Virus record (IMG/VR): IMGVR_UViG_3300017469_000055
Location: 1-7,612 of that record
DNA length: 7,612 nucleotides
Reading direction: 5' to 3' (one strand)
The notes beneath the pieces were generated by a model that was not told the origin of the DNA, searched no databases, and worked only from the letters and a program-made list of their open reading frames with translations. Position numbers and translations under genes: made by a program. Shown one piece after another: positions 1 through 7,560 of the stretch (positions are counted from its first letter, which is position 1; each line of letters starts with the position of its first letter).

Positions 1-1
1 A

Positions 2-244
2 GAGATTTTTCTAGGAAATTTCTCAGTTAATGAACTAGATGATACTTGTTTTACTGAAGAAGATGATGATATAAAATTCAAGTATGCTAATGTATATCTG
101 CTTTACGATAAAATGTACAAATTAAAGATAATTTTTGATGGCAATCAGGAAAATGCGATGTATATTACTGAAGATGATGTAGGCGGATTAGATGTATTTA
201 AGAAATTGCTTAGTCTATATTTTAATTTAAAAAATCAAAGGTGA
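2..244 (+). CDS. 5'-truncated acidic hypothetical protein (C-terminal 80 aa: EIFLGNFSVNELDDTCFTEEDDDIKFKYANVYLLYDKMYKLKIIFDGNQENAMYITEDDVGGLDVFKKLLSLYFNLKNQR)
   Basis: Frame 2 is open from the window edge to TGA at 242-244. Codon usage is viral-like. The stop overlaps an AGGTGA Shine-Dalgarno (SD) for the next gene. Not in the ORF track. Confidence 0.75.
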   Translation, partial: EIFLGNFSVNELDDTCFTEEDDDIKFKYANVYLLYDKMYKLKIIFDGNQENAMYITEDDVGGLDVFKKLLSLYFNLKNQR

Positions 245-248
245 AAGT

Positions 249-419
249 ATGAGTTTTAATAGTATAACAGATATAGAAATACTTTTAATTTATACAGACG
301 TTCTTTTCTTTTCATTATTTCTGTATTTCATCTTACAATTAAGACAATTAATGAAAAAAATTGAGGAAGAAGAAATGTTAAAAATGTTAAAGAAAAAATA
401 TGAAAAAAGTGATAGATGA
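249..419 (+). CDS. 56-aa single-pass membrane protein (MSFNSITDIEILLIYTDVLFFSLFLYFILQLRQLMKKIEEEEMLKMLKKKYEKSDR)
   Basis: Manual translation. AGGTGA SD at 239-244 precedes the ATG at 249. Hydrophobic stretch at about aa 11-29, then a charged helical tail. Confidence 0.7.
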   Translation: MSFNSITDIEILLIYTDVLFFSLFLYFILQLRQLMKKIEEEEMLKMLKKKYEKSDR

Positions 420-539
420 ATGAAACGGGAAACATGGAGAGATATTAGAGATTTAATATGTGTTATTTCTGTTGATTTTACAATAAGTTTTCTTTTATAT
501 GTGATTCTAGAATATATTATAAATCACAAATTAATTTAA
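420..539 (+). CDS. 39-aa hydrophobic peptide (MKRETWRDIRDLICVISVDFTISFLLYVILEYIINHKLI)
   Basis: ATG directly follows the upstream TGA (translational coupling). One TM-length hydrophobic segment. The stop is followed at once by a T-tract. Confidence 0.55.
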   Translation: MKRETWRDIRDLICVISVDFTISFLLYVILEYIINHKLI

Positions 540-546
540 TTTTTTT
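540..546 (+). terminator. oligo-T archaeal terminator
   Basis: T7 run directly after the TAA of 420..539. Confidence 0.55.
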
Positions 547-580
547 ATAGAAACGATAAATCGATACGTAAAAGTTTATC

Positions 581-620
581 GAAAAATTTATAAATGTAAA
601 CTGACATAAATATAATTGAT
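581..620 (+). promoter_or_regulatory. BRE-TATA promoter of ORF 625..849
   Basis: GAAAAA then TTTATAAA (587-594). ATTGAT initiator-like element at 615-620, whose G is 24 nt after the TATA box. Confidence 0.65.
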
Positions 621-624
621 AAAA

Positions 625-849
625 ATGAGGTTCCAAGTTGTAAATGTTACATATCACAACTTTGTACAAGTAAAACAAAATGGAAATGTTGTTTACGCTA
701 AATGTACATGTTGCCAGAAACAAAGAATTGCTGTATATATACAGACAGAATCAAAAAGAATATTTTTCTTTTCAGGATATGATGAAAATATAGCAAACAT
801 GCATTTTTTAAGTTTGATTAAAAAACAAAGTTCACAAAATCAAGATTGA
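625..849 (+). CDS. 74-aa hypothetical protein with a CTCC cysteine cluster
   Basis: ORF track 616..849. The ATG at 625 is preferred over the TTG at 616, which lies in the predicted initiator. Has its own promoter and a T-tract terminator at 854-860. Confidence 0.7.
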   Translation: MRFQVVNVTYHNFVQVKQNGNVVYAKCTCCQKQRIAVYIQTESKRIFFFSGYDENIANMHFLSLIKKQSSQNQD

Positions 850-853
850 ACAC

Positions 854-860
854 TTTTTTT
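854..860 (+). terminator. oligo-T terminator
   Basis: T7 run 5 nt after the stop of 625..849, followed by a pyrimidine-rich tract. Confidence 0.55.
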
Positions 861-941
861 CCTACTCAATTTTTCTGATTTGGGTTACCCCTTTTCTCTT
901 CTATTTTTTTGGACTATTTTTCTCCTGTTTGTAATATTATT

Positions 942-962
942 TCTAAATTTGCGAAATTTAGA
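942..962. repeat. inverted repeat TCTAAATTT-GCG-AAATTTAGA (operator candidate)
   Basis: Perfect 9-bp arms with a 3-nt spacer, about 36 nt upstream of the TATA box of the wHTH gene. Confidence 0.6.
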
Positions 963-990
963 TAGCGTAAGATGTTAATGTAAACCTATA

Positions 991-1032
991 AAGAAAATTT
1001 TATATATAAAAGCTTACATATTATATATTGAT
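991..1032 (+). promoter_or_regulatory. BRE-TATA promoter of the wHTH gene
   Basis: AAGAAAA then TTTATATA (999-1006). ATTGAT at 1027-1032, with the same spacing as the 625 promoter. Confidence 0.6.
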
Positions 1033-1038
1033 GGCAAT

Positions 1039-1263
1039 ATGAGAGTAGGAAGAAAGGAACAAGAAATCTTAAATTATTTATCTACATTTCCTTGCGGAGT
1101 ATGGAAAGAAGATTTGATAAATAATTTTAGCTTTGCAAAACGTTATAACATGATATTAAATAAAAGATTGCAAAATATGGAAAAGAAAGGATTGATAATT
1201 ATAAAAACAGAAATAAATCCAGAAACTGGGAGACAGAAAAAACGTGTTTATTTAAGACAATAA
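1039..1263 (+). CDS. winged helix-turn-helix DNA-binding protein (74 aa)
   Basis: wHTH pattern: EQEILNYL ... EDLINNF ... LNKRLQNMEKKGLIII, plus wing TEINPETGRQKKRVYL. Confidence 0.75.
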   Translation: MRVGRKEQEILNYLSTFPCGVWKEDLINNFSFAKRYNMILNKRLQNMEKKGLIIIKTEINPETGRQKKRVYLRQ

Positions 1264-1281: not shown

Positions 1282-1614
1282 TTATTTTTTACTTTCCCAT
1301 AAAATTTCTAGTCCTTGAATTCTATCCCATGTTATTCTTACTTTCTTTAATGTTATTTTATCATGATTATGTAAATCTCCAACATCAAATTCTACATCTA
1401 AACTTGTTTTTAAGATATGTAAAAATTTAAAATCAATATTGTTTATCAGAAAATTCATTTCTACAAGATTATCAAAATCAGAAAATGATAAATCAATTAA
1501 TGTCAAATTAGTAATATGTATATCGTATAGATTGTTCTTATATTCATAATATCTAAATTGTAGATTATTCCTCCTTAGAAAATCAAAAAGAATTTTTGCA
1601 TCTTTTACTTTCAA
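1282..1614 (-). CDS. hypothetical protein (110 aa), coupled to thyX
   Basis: TTG start overlaps the thyX stop (TTGA). AGGTGA SD lies just upstream, inside the thyX 3' end. Confidence 0.75.
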
Positions 1615-2372
1615 AATTCTTCACCTTTTTTTGAATTTTGTATACATTTATAAATTCCTTCTTTTGGAACTCCTTCTATACATCTTTTCGATATAAACTC
1701 CGTCTTCTCGTTTATTGAGTCAAGAGTTATCGGCGTGACACGTATAAAGTTCTCATGAATTATACAATTAGGTCCAGCATAACGGAATAGTCTAGGATGT
1801 ACTTTCTTCACTTCTTCGAGCATCTTCCATGCTAATTGTCGAAGTTCCCACTGAGTTCTAGAACATAAACGTAAGGCAAAGAAGTTATAAAGTTCTCTAG
1901 CATTCATGGTAACGACAATATTTGTATTTATGCCGTTTGGTAGGACGTAACGAGCATCTTCTTCTGGTACACCGGCTTCTAGGAGTTCATAATAACGTTT
2001 ATATGAATCGCTATAAGCTTTTTCTACAATTTCTTTAGCTCTTTTTTCTGTAGATGACGGTATAATTGGCTGATAATATTCTTCAATTGGTTTAGCAAAT
2101 CTATGACTCATTTGAGTATATGATGCAATTCTATGTCTTACAAGTTGATGTGAAACAACTCTAGAAATTCCTTCAATTGAGAAAGTGTATACGCTGTGTT
2201 CAAGTACAGACCAATATCCATGAATTATAGCATCAGATATCCATAGTTCTATTTCATCATCTGTCATTTTTTCTTTATGATATTCCCATCCTTTTCTTGA
2301 CCTACTCATTTTTGATGCAATAGCAATAACTTTTTCTCCGTCTGGAGTATATGAAACTAAAGTAACTTTCAT
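1611..2372 (-). CDS. thyX: FAD-dependent thymidylate synthase ThyX (253 aa)
   Basis: ThyX signature [13 protein letters not shown], plus [17 protein letters not shown] and [13 protein letters not shown]. The ATG at 2372 has an AGGAG SD upstream; the ORF-track start at 2381 is a GTG overlapping that SD. Confidence 0.95.
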
Positions 2373-2384
2373 TTTTAACACTCC

Positions 2385-2588
2385 TTATCTCCTCAATTTA
2401 GGACCTTTTTCTACCTTAATTTGTAAATTTTCCTCATTTTTCTTTTCTTCGTCGAAAAGTTTGTTTAACGCTAGTCTAATAACTTCGCCTTTTGACATTC
2501 TATGTTTTAGTCTATAGGCTTCTAGTTGTTCATACATATCTTCATCTATCTTAAACGTTACTACAATATTGCAAACTTTAGCACACAT
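2385..2588 (-). CDS. ribbon-helix-helix (CopG/aCcr1-like) transcription regulator (67 aa)
   Basis: VVTFKIDEDMYEQLEAYRLKHRMSKGEVIRLALNKL fits an RHH fold. C-terminal KVEK tail. Confidence 0.85.
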   Translation of the reverse strand: MCAKVCNIVVTFKIDEDMYEQLEAYRLKHRMSKGEVIRLALNKLFDEEKKNEENLQIKVEKGPKLRR

Positions 2589-2867
2589 TTAAACCACCAC
2601 ATCAAACTTCTTTACAATTACCATTTTTCCTATTGTCACGCTAACAGTATATTGTTTTTCATTTGTCAATTTGTTTATTCTAATTTCAAAATAGAAAGTT
2701 TTATTTCTTATTTCTAAATATCCCTTAATAATGTTATCTTTTTTTGTATAAAATAATATTTCAAATTTTTCTAAAAAATTCACAGTTTTGTGTAATAAAA
2801 TTTCTATATCTTCTTTTTCTATTTCTTGTACTATATTTACTATTTCTTGAAATGTATTTTGTGCCAT
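2589..2867 (-). CDS. rudivirus-type hypothetical protein (92 aa)
   Basis: ORF track 2589..2876. The ATG at 2867 is preferred over the TTG at 2876. The stop abuts the RHH start. Own TATA+GTC promoter at about 2890-2905. Confidence 0.75.
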   Translation of the reverse strand: MAQNTFQEIVNIVQEIEKEDIEILLHKTVNFLEKFEILFYTKKDNIIKGYLEIRNKTFYFEIRINKLTNEKQYTVSVTIGKMVIVKKFDVVV

Positions 2868-2962
2868 ATTTCTCAATAAAAATGTTGTGTTATGACAAAT
2901 AAAAAGGTTTTTAAATTTGCATTTTCCATGACGAATATGTCATATTAATAATATAAGGAATA

Positions 2963-3604
2963 TTACTTTTTGTCAGTTGATTGTAAATAATCCAAAACAG
3001 AACCAGAACATTTAGATTTAAAATCACAATTTTTACATAAATAATTGTTAGCTCCTGGAATGTTTTTATAATCTGTTAGTTTCAAATATTCTTTAAATTT
3101 CTTAATCCAATCTATAGCTTTTTGAATATATTCTTCTAATACATTTTTCTCAATTTGAAATTGTTTAACTTCTCTATTTATTCTATTTAAATATATGATA
3201 TAAACATTATCAATTTTGTAATTTTGTTGTTGTAAAAGATGATAATATATTGCAATTTGGTATAAATGATATTCTTTGATATTAAAATAATTGTTGGAAA
3301 TTGTTTTTATTTCTAGTAAATCGTTTCCACAAATCAAGTCTATTCTACCAGAAATTTTTAGACCTTCTATTTCTCCTTTTACCTCTATCTCTGATTTACA
3401 TCCTAATTTCTCAGTAAAATAGTTCTCTATTCTCAAATGATGTTGTTCTCCAAGCTCCAAAGTAAGTTCATTTATTCCTTTTTCAAATTCAAATTTCCTA
3501 GAGAAATATGACTTTCTGAAACATATTCCAACTTCAGAAGGAAAAACTAAGTCTTCTGGATATTTTATTTTGAAACTTTGTCTAACTAAATCTTCGTAAT
3601 TCAT
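2963..3604 (-). CDS. cas4: Cas4-like RecB-family nuclease with four Fe-S cysteines (SIRV2 gp19-like, 213 aa)
   Basis: N-terminal PSEVGIC, RecB motifs GRIDL / LEIKT / QIAIY and C-terminal [10 protein letters not shown]. The ATG at 3604 has a GGTGA SD. No CRISPR context, so this is a solo viral Cas4. Confidence 0.92.
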
Positions 3605-3606
3605 TC

Positions 3607-4914
3607 TCACTCACCTAAATTTGAAAATCTCATGAAATTGATGATTTGACTACAAATTTCTTCCTTCGTTCTCTGTCCAATTTGTATATCTATGTCAAGA
3701 GCCTGTAAGAGTATTTGTATATCTATTGCCTGTTCTTGTCTTCTAGATTCTAAGTTATCACAAATTACATAGTTATTTATACTGTTTATCTTCTGCTGAA
3801 TTAGTTCTACTAGAGCTTTCAGAATTGACGGATATAGAACTCTGGAATTTACAATTTTTTCATAAGTCTTTTTAATTGCTAATTGTATAATATGAATTCT
3901 GTCGAGAATTGCAGAAGTAAAAATTTGATAGTTTACAAGATAATCTTCTACATCTGGAGTTCTTAATCTGTTTAGAGTCATAGAATATGGATTTCCAGCG
4001 TAAATAATCGGTATACATTTCTGAATAGTTGAGGATTTTGATTCTGTTCCAGCTCCTCTGGTCCAGACACAATTTTCCAGACCAGTTGAAAGAGTGGCAT
4101 TTATTGCTCCTAATTCTTTTATGGAATATCCATCTTTCCAATTCTGAATTTCATCAAATATCAAACCATTTGACAAAAACACTGCACCATACATATTATT
4201 TCTGGCGTCATATACTAGATTTGCATATGTTGGAGTTTCTGTATAATAACGGAAATTAAATACTTCTTGTAGTATCATGAAAGTTGTAGTTTTTCCAGTT
4301 CCACGATTAGAAATTTCTATATAATTTATTTGTCTTTTCGTAATTGGGGATTTAAATAATGGGAATAATCTAGGAAGATATAGAAAGATATCTTGGATTT
4401 CCATTTTAGATGGGTCGTATCCGAAAGCTTGGAGTAGAAGAGCATATGTTTGATGTTCTTGATTAGCTAGGTCAAAAAGTTCTTTAGCAATTTCATAATT
4501 ATTCGGTGGTTCTATAGAATAAATATCGTTAATATACCATCCGTTAGACCCTTTTCTTATTTTCACAAACATAAAAGAAGTTATTAAATTATAGAAATCA
4601 TCAGGATTATCTGCTATATAATGTGGGTCAAAACTTGCTATAAACCCATTTTGAAATCTAGCAATTATTTTGTCATTTTTTACTTTAAAATTTGTTATTT
4701 TAGAGATAAATTTTATATCATCATAATATGGCAAAGTTGCTGAAAAATATTGTTGGTCTATTCCGCGTTTATAAGCTTTAAGAATTTCAATCTTTTTCTT
4801 ATCATCAATTTGTTTACCAGAAAGAATTATATTGAGAACTCTTTCTGTATCTCTCGGATTATAAAAAAAAGAATGTTCTTTAACTTTTTCAAGGAATTGG
4901 AAATTCCCATCCAT
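3607..4914 (-). CDS. AAA+ ATPase / putative helicase (SIRV2 gp18/ORF436-like; Lon/BrxL-type ATPase domain)
   Basis: Walker [10 protein letters not shown], Walker B LIFDE, sensor IIYAGN, Arg finger AILDRIH. Lies between SSB and Cas4, as in rudiviruses. Confidence 0.88.
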
Positions 4915-4939
4915 AAAAAAAATGGTATCTTATGACATT

Positions 4940-5353
4940 TTAAAATTCATCTTCAACATTCTTCTTACTTTGTTTCTTTTGTGATTTCTCTTGTTTTTGT
5001 TCATCTTGTTCTTCTTCTTCTGTATTTTCAAGTTCTAATTCTTCCTCTCTTACATTATTTCCATTTCTAGGAGAAAATTTTACATATTCGTTAAGTAAAT
5101 CTGCATATTTAGATAGGAATTCACTGATTAATCTCAAATCTTCTGCATCATTTGCTGTAATTCCTATCTGTTTCCTATAGTTTGCTTGTGAATGAATTGT
5201 CATGGAATATCTTACTTTTCCATTCTCTGGTATAGCGTTTAATTGTACTACAATTCTTTTTATACCTTTTATCTTTAGAATTCTTGAAACAATTTTGTTT
5301 TGTTCTTTAGCTTGTTTACCTAACTCATCTATTATTTCTTTTAGGGACGCCAT
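4940..5353 (-). CDS. rudiviral single-stranded DNA-binding protein (SIRV2 gp17/ORF131-like)
   Basis: MASLKEIIDELGKQAKEQNKIVSRILKIKGIKRIVVQLNA N-terminus. Disordered acidic tail ending EDEF. Conserved position upstream of the ATPase and Cas4. Confidence 0.85.
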   Translation of the reverse strand: MASLKEIIDELGKQAKEQNKIVSRILKIKGIKRIVVQLNAIPENGKVRYSMTIHSQANYRKQIGITANDAEDLRLISEFLSKYADLLNEYVKFSPRNGNNVREEELELENTEEEEQDEQKQEKSQKKQSKKNVEDEF

Positions 5354-5513
5354 TTACATCCCCTAATTAAAATATTATATTATGACAAATTTAAATATTA
5401 ACAAACTTATAAGTTAGCATATTTTTCAATATTTTTATTATAAACACAAAAATCAATATACATTATATTTTGAATATTTGAGTTGAGAATTGAGAGATAA
5501 AAGAAAAAAAGAT

Positions 5514-5786
5514 TTAGAGTAACTTAAAGAATAGAGACCTTATCAGCCTTGGTATTTTTGTATTATATTTTCTAGCTAATTGTTCTAATTTGTCGTAGTA
5601 TAATTCGTCTACTGTAAAAAACGCTCTGCCGTCATAAACTTCTTGTTTTTCAATTAGACTGAATTCAGTTTGTTGAGAAAATATTTTATCTATTTCTTGT
5701 TTGATTTGTTCTCTTTTTTCATAAAAAATAGATTGATATTTATGTGGAATTCTTACCTCAATATATTTATTTCTTTGTCTTCTCAT
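5514..5786 (-). CDS. putative tandem RHH DNA-binding protein (90 aa)
   Basis: C-terminal half RAFFTVDELYYDKLEQLARKYNTKIPRLIRSLF is RHH-like. N-terminal half YIEVRIPHKYQ has a similar beta-strand pattern. AGGAG SD upstream, A-run (T on minus strand) at 5504-5510 downstream. Confidence 0.65.
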   Translation of the reverse strand: MRRQRNKYIEVRIPHKYQSIFYEKREQIKQEIDKIFSQQTEFSLIEKQEVYDGRAFFTVDELYYDKLEQLARKYNTKIPRLIRSLFFKLL

Positions 5787-5857
5787 ATTTTTTTATACTC
5801 CTAACCTTGATATAAACGTGACATATACATTTAAATGTCAGATTTTCATTTACATTC

Positions 5858-6205
5858 ATGGACTGTAAAAAAGTTTTTAACTATCACTTTCTTTACAGTT
5901 ATACTTATTTTATTACAATTTCTACGAATTATCGATATGGAGATACAACAAAAATCTATAAAAAATTTCGGCAATATGTCTATAATCATGACTCAGATTC
6001 ACATGTTTTTTCTGTGAAAGAATATACAACAAAATTCCATGGGCTACATTATCATGTTCTCGTTTTTACGAATAAGAAACTTGATTATTCCAGAGTTCAT
6101 AAACATATGCCTTCTCATAGTGACATAAATATACAATTGGTTCCAAAAACAAAAAAAGATATAAAAAAAGTTTTAACTTATATGTTAAAAAATCAAAATG
6201 TCTAG
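5858..6205 (+). CDS. rep: HUH-endonuclease replication initiator Rep (SIRV1 ORF119-like)
   Basis: Motif I FITIST, motif II GLHYHVLV, motif III TYMLK with the catalytic Tyr. 115 aa, with no helicase domain. Confidence 0.92.
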   Translation: MDCKKVFNYHFLYSYTYFITISTNYRYGDTTKIYKKFRQYVYNHDSDSHVFSVKEYTTKFHGLHYHVLVFTNKKLDYSRVHKHMPSHSDINIQLVPKTKKDIKKVLTYMLKNQNV

Positions 6206-6206
6206 A

Positions 6207-6503
6207 TTATTTAGATGCTGAAGTTTGTGAATTTGTATTTTGTTCTGCTTTCTTTTGTGCTAATGAATTTACATCTCTAAGCGTATCCATATTCAGAAGT
6301 GAATTTATTCCAAGTGTAGTGGTATCTTTTAAACTTTCTGCAGTTACAATTGTAGATTTTGTCATTTGGTCGATAGCAGTTCTGAATGCCTCGTTTGTTT
6401 GTTTTTCGTTATAAAGATGTATTACTTCTCCGATTATATAACTCGTTACTAATGCTCCCATCAATACTAGAAATCCTTCATACGCATATGTTATTACAGT
6501 CAT
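6207..6503 (-). CDS. pvap: virus-associated pyramid protein PVAP (SIRV2 P98 / STIV C92 family), 98 aa
   Basis: From the ATG at 6503: N-terminal TM segment (FLVLMGALVTSYIIGEVI), then HLYNEKQ..AIDQMTKST..KDTT.GIN.LLNMDTLRDVNSLA, closely matching P98 as recalled. The ORF-track extension to 6629 is spurious. Confidence 0.92.
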   Translation of the reverse strand: MTVITYAYEGFLVLMGALVTSYIIGEVIHLYNEKQTNEAFRTAIDQMTKSTIVTAESLKDTTTLGINSLLNMDTLRDVNSLAQKKAEQNTNSQTSASK

Positions 6504-6601
6504 TTCAATTTTATATTGAACAAATTGCTTAGTAATAAATTTTCCGCAAAAATTCGAAACATATAAATATGTCATAATAAATATACATAAATTGATAAAA
6601 A
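6504..6601. promoter_or_regulatory. divergent promoter region pvap / svtR
   Basis: Minus strand: GGAAAA+TTTATTA (TATA at 6533-6539) and ATTGAA just before the pvap ATG. Plus strand: TATAAATA (6562-6569), TGTCATAA (6570-6577) and ATTGAT (6591-6596). Confidence 0.65.
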
Positions 6602-6775
6602 ATGACGGAAAAAATAAAATCTGAACCAAAATCAGAAAAAGTGGTTTTTGGAATAAATATGGACAGAAATCTCAAAATCAAACTAAAGAAATATTGTGCT
6701 GAACAAGATATAACAATTACAGAAGCTATAGAAACAGCAATTAAAGAATATCTAGAAAAGAGAGGAGTAAAATGA
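6602..6775 (+). CDS. svtR: SvtR-like RHH transcriptional repressor (57 aa: MTEKIKSEPKSEKVVFGINMDRNLKIKLKKYCAEQDITITEAIETAIKEYLEKRGVK)
   Basis: Manual translation, below the ORF-track cutoff. The VFGIxMD..LK..LK.YCA......AIE.AIKEYL.KR pattern matches SIRV1 SvtR (ORF56b) as recalled. Confidence 0.88.
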   Translation: MTEKIKSEPKSEKVVFGINMDRNLKIKLKKYCAEQDITITEAIETAIKEYLEKRGVK

Positions 6776-6948
6776 GAGTTATAACTGTGAAACTTGAAGA
6801 AGACCTTCTTAATAAACTTGACAGTTATGCTGAAAATCATAATCTTTATAGATCAGATGTTGTTAGGAATGCAATTATAGAATATCTAATGAAACATTTA
6901 GAAAATAAAGAAAATCAAGAATTAAAAGTTGAGAAAAAAGGTCTATAA
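6772..6948 (+). CDS. RHH (CopG/aCcr1-like) regulator (58 aa: MRVITVKLEEDLLNKLDSYAENHNLYRSDVVRNAIIEYLMKHLENKENQELKVEKKGL)
   Basis: Manual translation. ATGA overlap with the svtR stop, GAGGAG SD at 6762-6767, classic RHH pattern, T-tract at 6964-6970 downstream. Confidence 0.85.
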   Translation: MRVITVKLEEDLLNKLDSYAENHNLYRSDVVRNAIIEYLMKHLENKENQELKVEKKGL

Positions 6949-6963
6949 TCTTAAGTTATTAAC

Positions 6964-6970
6964 TTTTTTT
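6964..6970 (+). terminator. oligo-T terminator of the svtR-RHH operon
   Basis: T7 run 16 nt after the stop, between convergent genes. Confidence 0.5.
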
Positions 6971-6973
6971 CTT

Positions 6974-7516
6974 TTAACTTATATAATTCTTAATTTTATA
7001 TGTTTCAAATTTTGGAAGAGTCACATTATTTTGTTTTTGATATTTTCCGTGATACGGTTTCTCAACTGGAGATAATGTTTTAGCGAAAATTAGATGTAAA
7101 AATCTCTGTCCAGATTCAAGTTTTACTGGGAATTCTGACCCTACAATTTCTATCGTAAGTTGTCCTTTGAATCCCGCATCCACGATAGTTGGAGGTATAG
7201 AAATTCCTAATCTAGCATATGTAGAACGTAAATTTACAAACGCCATAATGTCATTTGGCAATTCTATATATTCGTCAGTTGTCATTAAGAGATGTTCATG
7301 TGGTTGAACTATAATGTCATTTTTATTTATAATTTCGTAAAAATCTTCTATATTATCGCCTGGTTCAAAAACTTTGTTTGTCTTTTTTAGTCTGGCAAAT
7401 TGATTTCCAATTCTTAAGTCTACACCGTTTTCTCTAACTATTTCTTCATCAAATGGTACTATTTTTATCCATTCTTTTTCTAGATAATATTTTAAATCTC
7501 TATCGCTTAAAATCAT
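6974..7516 (-). CDS. dcd: dCTP deaminase / dUTPase (trimeric dUTPase-fold, Sulfolobales Dcd-like; 180 aa)
   Basis: [39 protein letters not shown] (putative catalytic Glu present) and [15 protein letters not shown]. Confidence 0.9.
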
Positions 7517-7521
7517 ATTTG

Positions 7522-7560
7522 ATCAATCTAAAAAAACGTTTTATGACAAATATATTTCAA
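7522..7560 (-). promoter_or_regulatory. TATA+GTC rudiviral promoter of dcd
   Basis: Minus strand reads GAAATATATTTGTCATAA ... ATTGATCAAAT-ATG. Confidence 0.65.

What the first reader, a model, noticed from the sequence alone, without database searches (positions are those of the whole stretch)
1611..7516. Virus encodes both ThyX and a Dcd/dUTPase: a possible self-contained dCTP to dUMP to dTMP route
Seen: intact thyX and an intact dcd/dut-family gene within 6 kb, flanking the replication module. Known, from recall: classical rudiviruses carry either a dUTPase (SIRV1/2) or ThyX (ARV1), and some archaeal Dcd enzymes are bifunctional deaminase/dUTPases that yield dUMP, the ThyX substrate. Inference: the pair would divert dCTP into dTTP, which suits a very AT-rich genome.
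Basis: partly seen in the sequence, partly recalled or inferred. Interest (0 to 1): 0.65.

Follow-up and report, generated by a model that had tools for sequence, protein, structure and literature searches.

The report
Rudivirus carrying host-derived dcd and thyX
This fragment of an uncultivated Sulfolobales rod-shaped virus carries intact copies of its host's dCTP deaminase and flavin-dependent thymidylate synthase, which could together turn dCTP into dTMP, but the pairing is already known in other archaeal viruses and is common among this virus's relatives.

Summary
thyX (1611-2381, minus strand) and a 180-aa dcd/dut-family gene (6974-7516, minus strand) are intact. They flank the conserved rudiviral SSB/ATPase/Cas4-nuclease cassette.

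The window is a complete 7.6-kb IMG/VR contig of a Usarudivirus-like rudivirus, about 78% nucleotide identity to SIRV5-7.

The 180-aa protein is of the dCTP-deaminase type, not the archaeal monofunctional dUTPase type:
- It scores 180 bits against TIGR02274 (cut-off 92.8).
- It is 60-70% identical to chromosomal Sulfolobales Dcd.
- It keeps Ser98, Arg102, Asp113 and Glu123.
- The hosts' separate Dut paralogue has Ala at the Glu position.

A dCTP to dUMP to dTMP route is therefore plausible, but bifunctionality is untested.

The novelty premise fails:
- Stygiolobus rod-shaped virus was annotated with both genes by its authors.
- STSV1 and STSV2 also have both.
- At least 12 contigs, the window included, carry both in the same arrangement.
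- All four presence/absence states occur in the family.

The AT-richness argument is not supported, because relatives lacking both genes are slightly more AT-rich. No thymidylate kinase was found in five relatives. The folate and NADPH requirements are textbook knowledge, not tested here.

Both genes are host-derived, fitted to viral codon usage and under purifying selection. Verdict: ordinary accessory nucleotide-metabolism genes, of low interest.

The parts
1611..2381 (-). thyX, flavin-dependent thymidylate synthase. 256 aa from the GTG at 2381; the likelier start is the ATG at 2372, giving 253 aa.
   Evidence: Pfam Thy1 2e-65 and TIGR02170 205.7 bits. RHR-x7-S motif at R82 H83 R84 ... S92. 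The substrate-binding Arg columns aligned to T. maritima ThyX are kept. All 15 checked active-site columns are identical to cellular Sulfolobales ThyX. 75-81% identical to chromosomal Sulfolobales ThyX.
6974..7516 (-). dcd, a dCTP-deaminase-type enzyme of the trimeric dUTPase superfamily. 180 aa; probably a bifunctional dCTP deaminase/dUTPase.
   Evidence: TIGR02274 180.2 bits (cut-off 92.8). Archaeal dUTPase model NF002598 only 56 bits (cut-off 130). R97 S98 R102 T110 D113 E123 Y155 K158 Y159 Q162 are conserved with E. coli Dcd and host Dcd. 60-70% identical to Sulfolobales Dcd.
4940..5353 (-). PHA01746-like protein, 137 aa, at the SSB position of the rudiviral SSB/ATPase/nuclease cassette.
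   Evidence: PF21017 1.5e-54. Syntenic in all relatives. Cassette described in 10.1101/2020.01.16.907410.
3607..4914 (-). Cassette ATPase, 435 aa (annotated as ssDNA-annealing ATPase or helicase in relatives).
   Evidence: BrxL_ATPase domain 4.5e-14. 81-98% identical in relatives and 68% in SRV ORF440.
2963..3610 (-). Cas4-like PD-(D/E)XK nuclease of the cassette, 215 aa.
   Evidence: PF12705 1.1e-8; a PF01930 (Cas4) match at 22.2 bits lies just under its 22.7-bit cut-off. Syntenic.
2385..2588 (-). Ribbon-helix-helix (CopG-like) protein, 67 aa, directly upstream of thyX. Its stop lies 3 nt from the thyX GTG.
   Evidence: phrog_876 1e-11. Found next to thyX in relatives that carry thyX. Only weak hits to other RHH genes in SIRV4/5/11.
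1282..1614 (-). orf110, an unknown 110-aa protein whose TTG start overlaps the thyX stop. It travels with thyX.
   Evidence: No Pfam or PHROG hit. Atlas hits are all hypothetical proteins at low score. A homologue directly follows thyX in L002, L005, L006, L011, L012, L022, L103, L119 and L139, and is absent from relatives without thyX.
2589..2876 (-). orf95, a conserved small rudiviral protein between the nuclease gene and the RHH-thyX block.
   Evidence: phrog_8868 1.9e-17. Homologues in all relatives.
6207..6629 (-). ORF containing the P98-type pyramid (egress) protein homologue. The homologous part is about 6207-6503.
   Evidence: phrog_8367 'pyramid forming protein' 3.8e-46 over residues 43-136 of the 140-aa ORF. 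The SIRV5 ORF12 annotation agrees.

Best explanation
The window is the left-arm region of an uncultivated Usarudivirus-like rudivirus of Sulfolobales. It carries two accessory nucleotide-metabolism genes captured from Sulfolobales hosts: a Dcd-type dCTP deaminase and a ThyX thymidylate synthase. They sit on either side of the core SSB/ATPase/nuclease cassette.

Shown:
- Both genes are intact.
- They keep all catalytic residues of their cellular counterparts.
- Their codon usage matches the virus.
- They are under purifying selection.
- They recur together at the same positions in many related contigs.

Inferred:
- The Dcd-type enzyme deaminates dCTP and hydrolyses the product to dUMP, as a bifunctional DCD-DUT like M. 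jannaschii MJ0430 or mycobacterial Dcd:dut.
- ThyX methylates dUMP to dTMP using host methylene-folate, NADPH and FAD.
- Host kinases complete dTTP synthesis.
- The net effect is a higher dTTP:dCTP ratio with low dUTP during replication of a 73% A+T genome.

The pair is a dispensable booster of a pathway the host already has, not a self-contained pathway. It is a known gene combination.
For: Gene identity:
- Dcd type rather than Dut type: TIGR02274 180 bits against a cut-off of 92.8; NF002598 56 bits against a cut-off of 130.

Catalytic residues:
- Ser98, Arg102, Asp113 and Glu123 align with MJ0430 Ser118, Arg122, Asp135 and Glu145. They also align with E. coli Ser111, Arg115, Asp128 and Glu138.
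- Sulfolobales genomes hold two paralogues. The Glu-bearing Dcd is 60-65% identical to the window protein. An Ala-bearing Dut type, like PDB 2yzj, is 38% identical.
- The SIRV1 protein annotated dUTPase (ORF158a) is 61-63% identical. It is also Dcd type and keeps the Glu.
- The best solved relatives include the dUMP-forming MJ0430 (74.7 bits), ahead of monofunctional E. coli Dcd (42 bits).
- ThyX has the RHR-x7-S motif, and its active-site columns are identical to host ThyX.

Evolution:
- Host origin: Dcd is 60-70% and ThyX 75-81% identical to chromosomal Sulfolobales proteins.
- GC3 is 0.18-0.20, like neighbouring viral genes.
- dN/dS is 0.08-0.21.
- Recurrent synteny is shown.

Physiological precedent:
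- In mycobacteria, inactivating Dcd:dut raises dCTP about 6-fold and halves dTTP, while Dut handles dUTP (PMC5519681).
Against: - No assay exists for this protein or, to my knowledge, for any Sulfolobales Dcd.
- The residues that carry out the dUTPase half-reaction (Asp113 and the C-terminal lid) are also conserved in monofunctional E. coli Dcd. Sequence therefore cannot separate mono- from bifunctionality.
- The host keeps a separate Dut, which fits either model.
- Closely related viruses manage with one gene or neither, at equal or greater AT-richness. The benefit must therefore be conditional.
- The apparent association of the two genes (Fisher p = 0.01-0.02 on raw counts) rests on only 1-2 phylogenetically independent contrasts.
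- That the SIRV1 enzyme has measured dUTPase activity comes from my recall of Prangishvili et al. 1998 and from the record's annotation. The paper could not be read here.
Confidence: 0.6

Rival explanations
1. The enzyme is a monofunctional dCTP deaminase, as in E. coli. It releases dUTP, and the host's separate Dut-type paralogue must make the dUMP that ThyX uses. The route then depends on the host at its middle step.
For: All deaminase residues are present. Sulfolobales genomes do carry a dedicated Dut-type paralogue with Ala at the Glu position, which is the E. coli-style division of labour. No sequence feature found here proves dUTPase activity.
Against: The SIRV1 homologue (61-63% identical, same type) is annotated dUTPase by its authors. 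By my recall it was shown to hydrolyse dUTP. The window protein scores higher against the dUMP-forming MJ0430 (1ogh, so named in the PDB) than against E. coli Dcd. The top hit, 4xjc, is bifunctional only by my recall. A virus that floods the cell with dUTP would risk uracil incorporation. M. jannaschii (my recall) and mycobacteria (PMC5519681) also keep a Dut beside a bifunctional enzyme.
Confidence: 0.2
2. In practice the protein works only as a dUTPase that keeps uracil out of viral DNA at high temperature, as the older 'dUTPase' annotation says. ThyX is an unrelated accessory gene, and the two do not form a route.
For: It is annotated as dUTPase in SIRV1, SIRV3, STSV1/2 and SRV. The two genes are 4.6 kb apart, in separate gene blocks, and each occurs without the other in some relatives.
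Against: The catalytic Glu, Ser and Arg for deamination are strictly conserved under purifying selection. The cells' true monofunctional Dut paralogue has lost the Glu. The window protein fails both dUTPase models: NF002598 56 against 130 bits and TIGR00576 36.7 against 102.55 bits. Even as a dUTPase it would still supply dUMP to ThyX.
Confidence: 0.15
3. The genes are near-neutral host passengers, or they serve to deplete dCTP against the host or competing viruses rather than to feed thymidylate synthesis.
For: They lie in the variable terminal arm where rudiviruses swap genes (PMC5454432). They are missing from all cultured Usarudivirus isolates except for dcd in SIRV5-7. thyX has been captured from hosts more than once in the family: the AU test rejects a single rudiviral clade, p = 0.004.
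Against: dN/dS of 0.08-0.21, viral GC3 and positional conservation across diverged contigs argue for selected function. Nothing in the data points to a depletion role.
Confidence: 0.05

Closest known systems
Stygiolobus rod-shaped virus (SRV, Azorudivirus; NC_025375/FM164764), ORF257 thymidylate synthase plus ORF168 dUTPase
   Same: A rudivirus with both genes in the left arm, near the same ATPase/nuclease cassette. ThyX is 83% identical and groups with the window clade (93/93).
   Different: The order is different: thyX lies upstream and dcd downstream of the cassette. Its Dcd is only 52% identical and branches apart from the window clade. The cassette ATPase is 68% identical.
Usarudivirus isolates SIRV5, SIRV6 and SIRV7 (Yellowstone)
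   Same: About 78% nucleotide identity over 2999-7557. The gene order is the same. dcd is at the same position and 86% identical.
   Different: They have no thyX, no RHH67 and no orf110. SIRV4 and SIRV8-11 lack dcd as well.
Large spindle-shaped viruses STSV1 and STSV2 of Sulfolobus tengchongensis
   Same: They carry both thyX (77% identical) and a Dcd-type 'dUTPase' (69% identical).
   Different: They belong to an unrelated virus family with circular 75-kb genomes. The two genes are 12-14 kb apart. STSV1 ThyX groups with Saccharolobus/S. tengchongensis host sequences.
SIRV1 dUTPase (ORF158a, CAC93972)
   Same: Same Dcd-type clade, 61-63% identical, with all catalytic residues including the Glu.
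   Different: It is about 22 residues shorter, through an internal deletion. SIRV1 has no thyX. Only its dUTPase activity has been reported, as far as I recall.
Bifunctional dCTP deaminase-dUTPase: M. jannaschii MJ0430 (PDB 1ogh, 1pkh) and M. tuberculosis Dcd:dut (2qlp)
   Same: Same family, with the Ser/Arg/Asp/Glu constellation. Mycobacteria likewise pair Dcd:dut with ThyX, and Dcd:dut sets the dTTP/dCTP balance (PMC5519681).
   Different: Only partial similarity: 74.7 and about 52-58 bits. The Sulfolobales and viral proteins lack two residues in the loop before Asp113. Activity is untested.
Chromosomal Dcd and ThyX of Sulfolobales (for example Acidianus sulfidivorans, S. acidocaldarius, Saccharolobus)
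   Same: 60-70% (Dcd) and 75-81% (ThyX) identity, with identical catalytic columns.
   Different: The viral copies use viral codon composition (GC3 about 0.18-0.20). The window-clade Dcd forms its own 100/100 clade.

Membership tests
ThyX, flavin-dependent thymidylate synthase (PF02511 / TIGR02170) | Profile score above the curated cut-off | tested here: met
   Pfam 220.5 bits (cut-off 24.8); TIGR02170 205.7 bits (cut-off 87.9).
ThyX, flavin-dependent thymidylate synthase (PF02511 / TIGR02170) | ThyX motif RHR-x7-S and the dUMP-binding arginines | tested here: met
   R82 H83 R84 ... S92 R94, plus R144 and R171, align with T. maritima R78 H79 R80, S88, R90, R147 and R174. They are identical in host ThyX. 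The T. maritima H53, E86 and Y91 positions are Y, Q and F, as in all cellular Sulfolobales ThyX.
ThyX, flavin-dependent thymidylate synthase (PF02511 / TIGR02170) | FAD- and NADPH-dependent dUMP methylation; complementation of a thymidylate synthase defect | not testable with these tools
   Needs an enzyme assay or a genetic complementation test.
dCTP deaminase family (TIGR02274; both dUTP- and dUMP-forming enzymes) | Profile score above the curated cut-off | tested here: met
   180.2 bits against a cut-off of 92.8.
dCTP deaminase family (TIGR02274; both dUTP- and dUMP-forming enzymes) | Metal-free deaminase triad: Ser, Arg and the catalytic Glu (E. coli S111, R115, E138) | tested here: met
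   S98, R102 and E123 are invariant in alignment A1 and in the host alignment.
dCTP deaminase family (TIGR02274; both dUTP- and dUMP-forming enzymes) | C-terminal nucleotide-binding lid (P-Y ... G-K-Y-x-x-Q) | tested here: met
   P154 Y155 ... K158 Y159 Q162 are conserved with E. coli Dcd. The functional roles are from my recall of the E. coli structure papers.
Bifunctional dCTP deaminase-dUTPase (dUMP-forming, EC 3.5.4.30) | dUMP and PPi as products of dCTP | not testable with these tools
   Needs an assay. The only indirect support is the dUTPase annotation of the SIRV1 homologue and the higher similarity to the dUMP-forming MJ0430 than to E. coli Dcd.
Bifunctional dCTP deaminase-dUTPase (dUMP-forming, EC 3.5.4.30) | A sequence determinant that separates bifunctional from monofunctional enzymes | tested here: inconclusive
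   Asp113 (MJ0430 Asp135) is present but is also conserved in monofunctional E. coli Dcd. I found no discriminating residue.
Archaeal monofunctional dUTPase (NF002598 / PDB 2yzj type) | Profile score above the cut-off, and loss of the deaminase Glu | tested here: not met
   56 bits against a cut-off of 130. The window protein has Glu where S. tokodaii 2yzj and three Sulfolobales-type Dut paralogues have Ala.
Classical trimeric dUTPase (PF00692 / TIGR00576) | Family score above the cut-off (five-motif enzyme with C-terminal motif V) | tested here: not met
   TIGR00576 36.7 bits against 102.55; NF001862 28.2 against 103. The Pfam dUTPase domain matches only at superfamily level (34.6 bits).
Rudiviridae (Usarudivirus-like) | Core SSB/ATPase/Cas4-nuclease cassette, P98 pyramid protein and synteny with SIRVs | tested here: met
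   The ATPase is 82-85% identical to SIRV4-11.
Rudiviridae (Usarudivirus-like) | Major capsid protein, linear genome with terminal inverted repeats | not testable with these tools
   The contig is 7.6 kb, 23% complete by CheckV. These features lie outside it.

The most novel reading that the evidence does not exclude
The whole clade of 'dUTPases' in Sulfolobales viruses (SIRV1-3, SIRV5-7, SRV, STSV1/2 and this virus), together with the cellular Sulfolobales Dcd, are really bifunctional dUMP-forming dCTP deaminases. In the many uncultivated rudiviruses that also carry thyX, the two genes would then act as a selected two-enzyme shunt that resets the infected cell's dTTP:dCTP ratio, with gain and loss of the two genes coupled.
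Probability: 0.45. Interest if true: 0.35.

Novelty: new member of a known kind. Interest (0 to 1): 0.2.

Why it matters
Little changes if the explanation is true. Viruses of bacteria, archaea and eukaryotes often carry thymidylate-synthesis genes, and this pairing is already on record for SRV and STSV1/2. There are three modest points of value:
1. The rudiviral 'dUTPase' is of the host Dcd type, with an intact deaminase site. The long-standing annotation may therefore describe only half of its activity, and one enzyme assay would settle it.
2. The both-genes genotype dominates in uncultivated Yellowstone-type rudiviruses but is missing from the cultured isolates. Laboratory SIRVs therefore under-represent the natural accessory gene set.
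3. thyX has been taken from hosts repeatedly, and ARV1 and STSV1 ThyX group with sequences from their own host genera.

Tried and rejected
- **Primary papers not held.** Three could not be read: Prangishvili 1998 JBC on the SIRV dUTPase, Vestergaard 2008 on SRV, and Hogrefe 2002 on the P. furiosus dUTPase. Statements about them are marked as recall or taken from record annotations.
- **Literature searches.** Searches combining rudivirus, dUTPase and thymidylate synthase, or SIRV and dCTP, or B. halodurans, found nothing useful. That PDB 4xjc is the bifunctional B. halodurans enzyme is therefore only my recall.
- **Genome scan.** The search for related loci in genome contigs with Dcd returned no named Sulfolobales genome, only Desulfurococcales, Thermofilaceae and bacterial MAGs. 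I reached Sulfolobales-type genomes indirectly. One was identified as Acidianus brierleyi only by its matching contig length of 2,947,244.
- **Coupled gain and loss.** A phylogenetic test was underpowered: 1-2 independent pairs, sign test p = 1. The raw Fisher p of 0.01-0.02 is not independent evidence.
- In one search I scored L023 as lacking dcd. Its contig does not reach the dcd position of its twin L022, so it should be unscored.
- **Single origin of thyX.** A single origin of the Usarudivirus-like thyX was not rejected (AU p = 0.14). I therefore make no claim of repeated capture within that group.
- **Sequencing runs.** The look-up of sequencing runs gave one hot-springs metagenome holding 5% of the words and no RNA run. 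Read laying was not used, so there is no expression evidence.
- **orf110.** No Pfam, PHROG or atlas lead, and no similarity to SRV ORF116a.
- **Not run.** No structure prediction or complex prediction was run, because neither can separate mono- from bifunctional enzymes.

Full report
**What is in the window**

The window is an entire IMG/VR contig of 7,612 nt, 26.7% G+C, rated 23% complete. Megablast places it among the Sulfolobus islandicus rod-shaped viruses. It has 77.7-77.8% nucleotide identity to SIRV5, SIRV6 and SIRV7 over 2999-7557. SIRV5 is classified in Usarudivirus and comes from Yellowstone.

On the minus strand, the ORFs of interest are:
- dcd (7516-6974)
- a P98-type pyramid protein
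- a PHA01746-like protein at the SSB position (5353-4940)
- an ATPase (4914-3607)
- a Cas4-like PD-(D/E)XK nuclease (3610-2963)
- orf95
- a 67-aa ribbon-helix-helix protein
- thyX (2381-1611)
- orf110

The three middle genes are the conserved rudiviral cassette for an ssDNA-binding protein, an ssDNA-annealing ATPase and a Cas4-like exonuclease (10.1101/2020.01.16.907410).

**ThyX**

The 256-aa ORF scores 220.5 bits on Pfam Thy1 and 205.7 bits on TIGR02170. The likely start is the ATG at 2372, shortly downstream of a GGAG. All homologues align from there.

Aligned to T. maritima ThyX structures, it keeps the RHR-x7-S motif (R82 H83 R84 ... S92), R94, and the two further arginines R144 and R171. 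Fifteen checked active-site columns are identical to those of seven cellular Sulfolobales ThyX proteins and five viral ones.

It is 75-81% identical to chromosomal ThyX of Sulfurisphaera, Saccharolobus, Acidianus and Sulfolobus. Among viruses it is 83% identical to SRV and SMV3, 78% to ARV1 and 77% to STSV1/2.

**The 180-aa protein**

It belongs to the dCTP-deaminase branch of the trimeric dUTPase superfamily:
- TIGR02274: 180.2 bits against a cut-off of 92.8.
- Archaeal dUTPase model NF002598: 56 bits against 130.
- Classical dUTPase model TIGR00576: 36.7 bits against 102.55.

The best solved relatives are a 177-aa dCTP deaminase (4xjc, 88.5 bits), the S. tokodaii 'hypothetical dUTPase' (2yzj, 78 bits) and the dUMP-forming M. 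jannaschii enzyme (1ogh, 74.7 bits). Monofunctional E. coli Dcd scores 42 bits.

Counting along the printed alignment, Ser98, Arg102, Asp113 and Glu123 match MJ0430 Ser118, Arg122, Asp135 and Glu145. They also match E. coli Ser111, Arg115, Asp128 and Glu138. The C-terminal P-Y...G-K-Y-x-x-Q segment is conserved as well.

The protein is 60-70% identical to the chromosomal 'dCTP deaminase' of Sulfolobales. That is more than its identity to the SIRV1 dUTPase (61-63%) or the SRV protein (52%).

Sulfolobales-type genomes carry two paralogues. One has the Glu and is 60-65% identical to the window protein. The other has Ala at that position and is 38% identical, like 2yzj. The viral gene is thus a copy of the host's dcd, not of its dut.

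The SIRV1 protein that its authors annotated as dUTPase is of the same Dcd type and keeps the Glu. By my recall that protein hydrolyses dUTP in vitro. If so, the simplest reading is that the clade is bifunctional. This remains an inference. The dUTPase-side residues are also conserved in monofunctional E. coli Dcd, and I found no residue that tells the two kinds apart.

**Is the co-occurrence unusual?**

It is not.

Reference genomes (tblastn of both proteins against 50,697 virus records; rudiviruses listed through the cassette ATPase):

| State | Viruses |
|---|---|
| Both genes | SRV |
| thyX only | ARV1 |
| dcd only | SIRV1, SIRV1-XX, SIRV2, SIRV3, SIRV5, SIRV6, SIRV7, SBRV1 |
| Neither listed | SIRV4, SIRV8-11, three OM4017xx SIRVs, ARV2, ARV3, MRV1, SSRV1, SMRV1 |

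SRV's own annotation reads 'ORF257 putative thymidylate synthase' and 'ORF168 putative dUTPase'. STSV1 and STSV2 also carry both.

Thirty IMG/VR records were found through the ATPase. Profile searches of the whole records found ThyX in 11 and the DCD domain in 12, with both in six. One of the six is a 40.7-kb record rated 100% complete. A metagenome scan added further contigs.

Counting distinct contigs, at least 12 carry both genes in the window's arrangement: the window, L002, L003, L004, L005, L008, L017/L118, L022, L100, L103, L104 and L119. Two contigs that cover both positions have thyX only (L012, L105). SIRV5-7 have dcd only. Eight records have neither: SIRV4, 8, 9, 10 and 11, G030, L020 and L024.

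On an ATPase tree, the state lacking thyX is confined to the clade that holds the cultured isolates, L010 being the one exception.

**Are the two genes functionally coupled?**

Raw counts show an association (Fisher p = 0.01-0.02). The tree offers only one or two independent contrasts, so this cannot be taken as evidence. The genes lie 4.6 kb apart in separate blocks, and each occurs alone in some relatives.

**Origin and selection**

- GC3 of thyX (0.195) and dcd (0.177) matches neighbouring viral genes (0.12-0.25). Neither is a recent arrival.
- Against relatives, dN/dS is 0.09-0.21 for dcd and 0.08-0.20 for thyX, compared with 0.05-0.10 for the ATPase. dS is partly saturated.
- The window-clade Dcd proteins form one clade (100/100) among Sulfolobales sequences. 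SIRV1, STSV1 and SRV branch elsewhere.
- Viral ThyX sequences are scattered among host sequences. ARV1 groups with Acidianus brierleyi (96/95). STSV1 groups with Saccharolobus/S. tengchongensis. L022 groups with Sulfuracidifex. The window clade groups with L012 and SRV (93/93).
- A single clade of all rudiviral ThyX is rejected (AU p = 0.004, a post hoc grouping). A single clade of the Usarudivirus-like ones is not rejected (p = 0.14).

**Mechanism**

The best-supported reading is an accessory booster of thymidylate supply. The Dcd-type enzyme takes dCTP to dUMP, either directly or through host Dut. ThyX makes dTMP, and host kinases finish the job.

The mycobacterial precedent shows that a Dcd:dut enzyme sets the dTTP/dCTP balance while Dut sanitises dUTP (PMC5519681).

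- AT-richness does not predict the genotype. Relatives with neither gene are 24.4-25.0% G+C, against 25.6-27.7% for those with both.
- The route is not self-contained. No thymidylate kinase was found in the complete relative or in four others. ThyX also needs host folate and reductant (established knowledge).

**Comparison and novelty**

This is a new, uncultivated member of a known virus group, carrying a known pair of host-derived genes. The one open point is biochemical: whether the Sulfolobales and viral Dcd clade forms dUMP directly.

**Limits**

- Three key primary papers were not available.
- Only one weak holder was found among public sequencing runs, with no RNA run.

Noticed in passing
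window 1282-1614 (-): orf110 is a 110-aa ORF with very low G+C (21%). Its TTG start overlaps the thyX stop codon. A homologue directly follows thyX in nine related contigs and is absent from relatives without thyX. No family, fold lead or function was found.
   Followed up: partly
window 2385-2588 (-): A 67-aa ribbon-helix-helix (CopG-like) gene sits directly upstream of thyX. It is found with thyX in most relatives, while SIRV5 has an unrelated small ORF at this position. It may be a regulator that arrived with the thyX block.
   Followed up: partly
L091 (ARV1), L092 (STSV1) and L022, against host ThyX proteins P0137, P0174 and P0185: Viral ThyX sequences sit next to those of plausible host genera: ARV1 with Acidianus brierleyi (96/95), STSV1 with Saccharolobus/S. 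tengchongensis, and L022 with Sulfuracidifex metallicus. This suggests repeated capture or replacement from hosts. The AU test rejects one rudiviral clade (p = 0.004).
   Followed up: yes
ATPase tree of loci L002-L031: All cultured Usarudivirus isolates (SIRV4-11) lack thyX, and most lack dcd. Nearly all uncultivated relatives from metagenomes carry thyX, usually with dcd. Laboratory isolates seem to under-represent the natural accessory gene content.
   Followed up: partly
KP282677 / NC_029103 (SMV3), 45994-46738: The SMV3 thyX is 81% identical in nucleotides to the window's gene. It matches in two pieces and is annotated as two thyX features, so it looks split by a frameshift or stop.
   Followed up: no
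L060 (JAJYVZ010000011.1); proteins P0145 and P0235: MAG contigs labelled Micrarchaeota, Nanopusillus and Micrarchaeaceae encode a Dcd 61% identical and ThyX proteins 73-80% identical to the viral ones, which is Sulfolobales-like. This points either to mis-binned Sulfolobales or viral DNA, or to transfer into DPANN symbionts.
   Followed up: no
window 6207-6629 (-): The 140-aa ORF called from a TTG start contains the P98 pyramid-protein homologue only in residues 43-136. The real gene is probably about 98 aa (about 6207-6503), as in SIRV5 ORF12.
   Followed up: partly
L056 (SIRV1 ORF158a) against window 6974-7516: The SIRV1 enzyme lacks about 22 residues, corresponding to window residues 46-66. 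That segment is present in the host Dcd and in all Usarudivirus-like copies. The structural consequence was not examined.
   Followed up: no
window 1-1263 (+): Three small plus-strand ORFs (phrog_15508, phrog_13082, phrog_9113) of unknown function lie on the terminal side of thyX. They are conserved, with variable identity, in relatives both with and without thyX.
   Followed up: no
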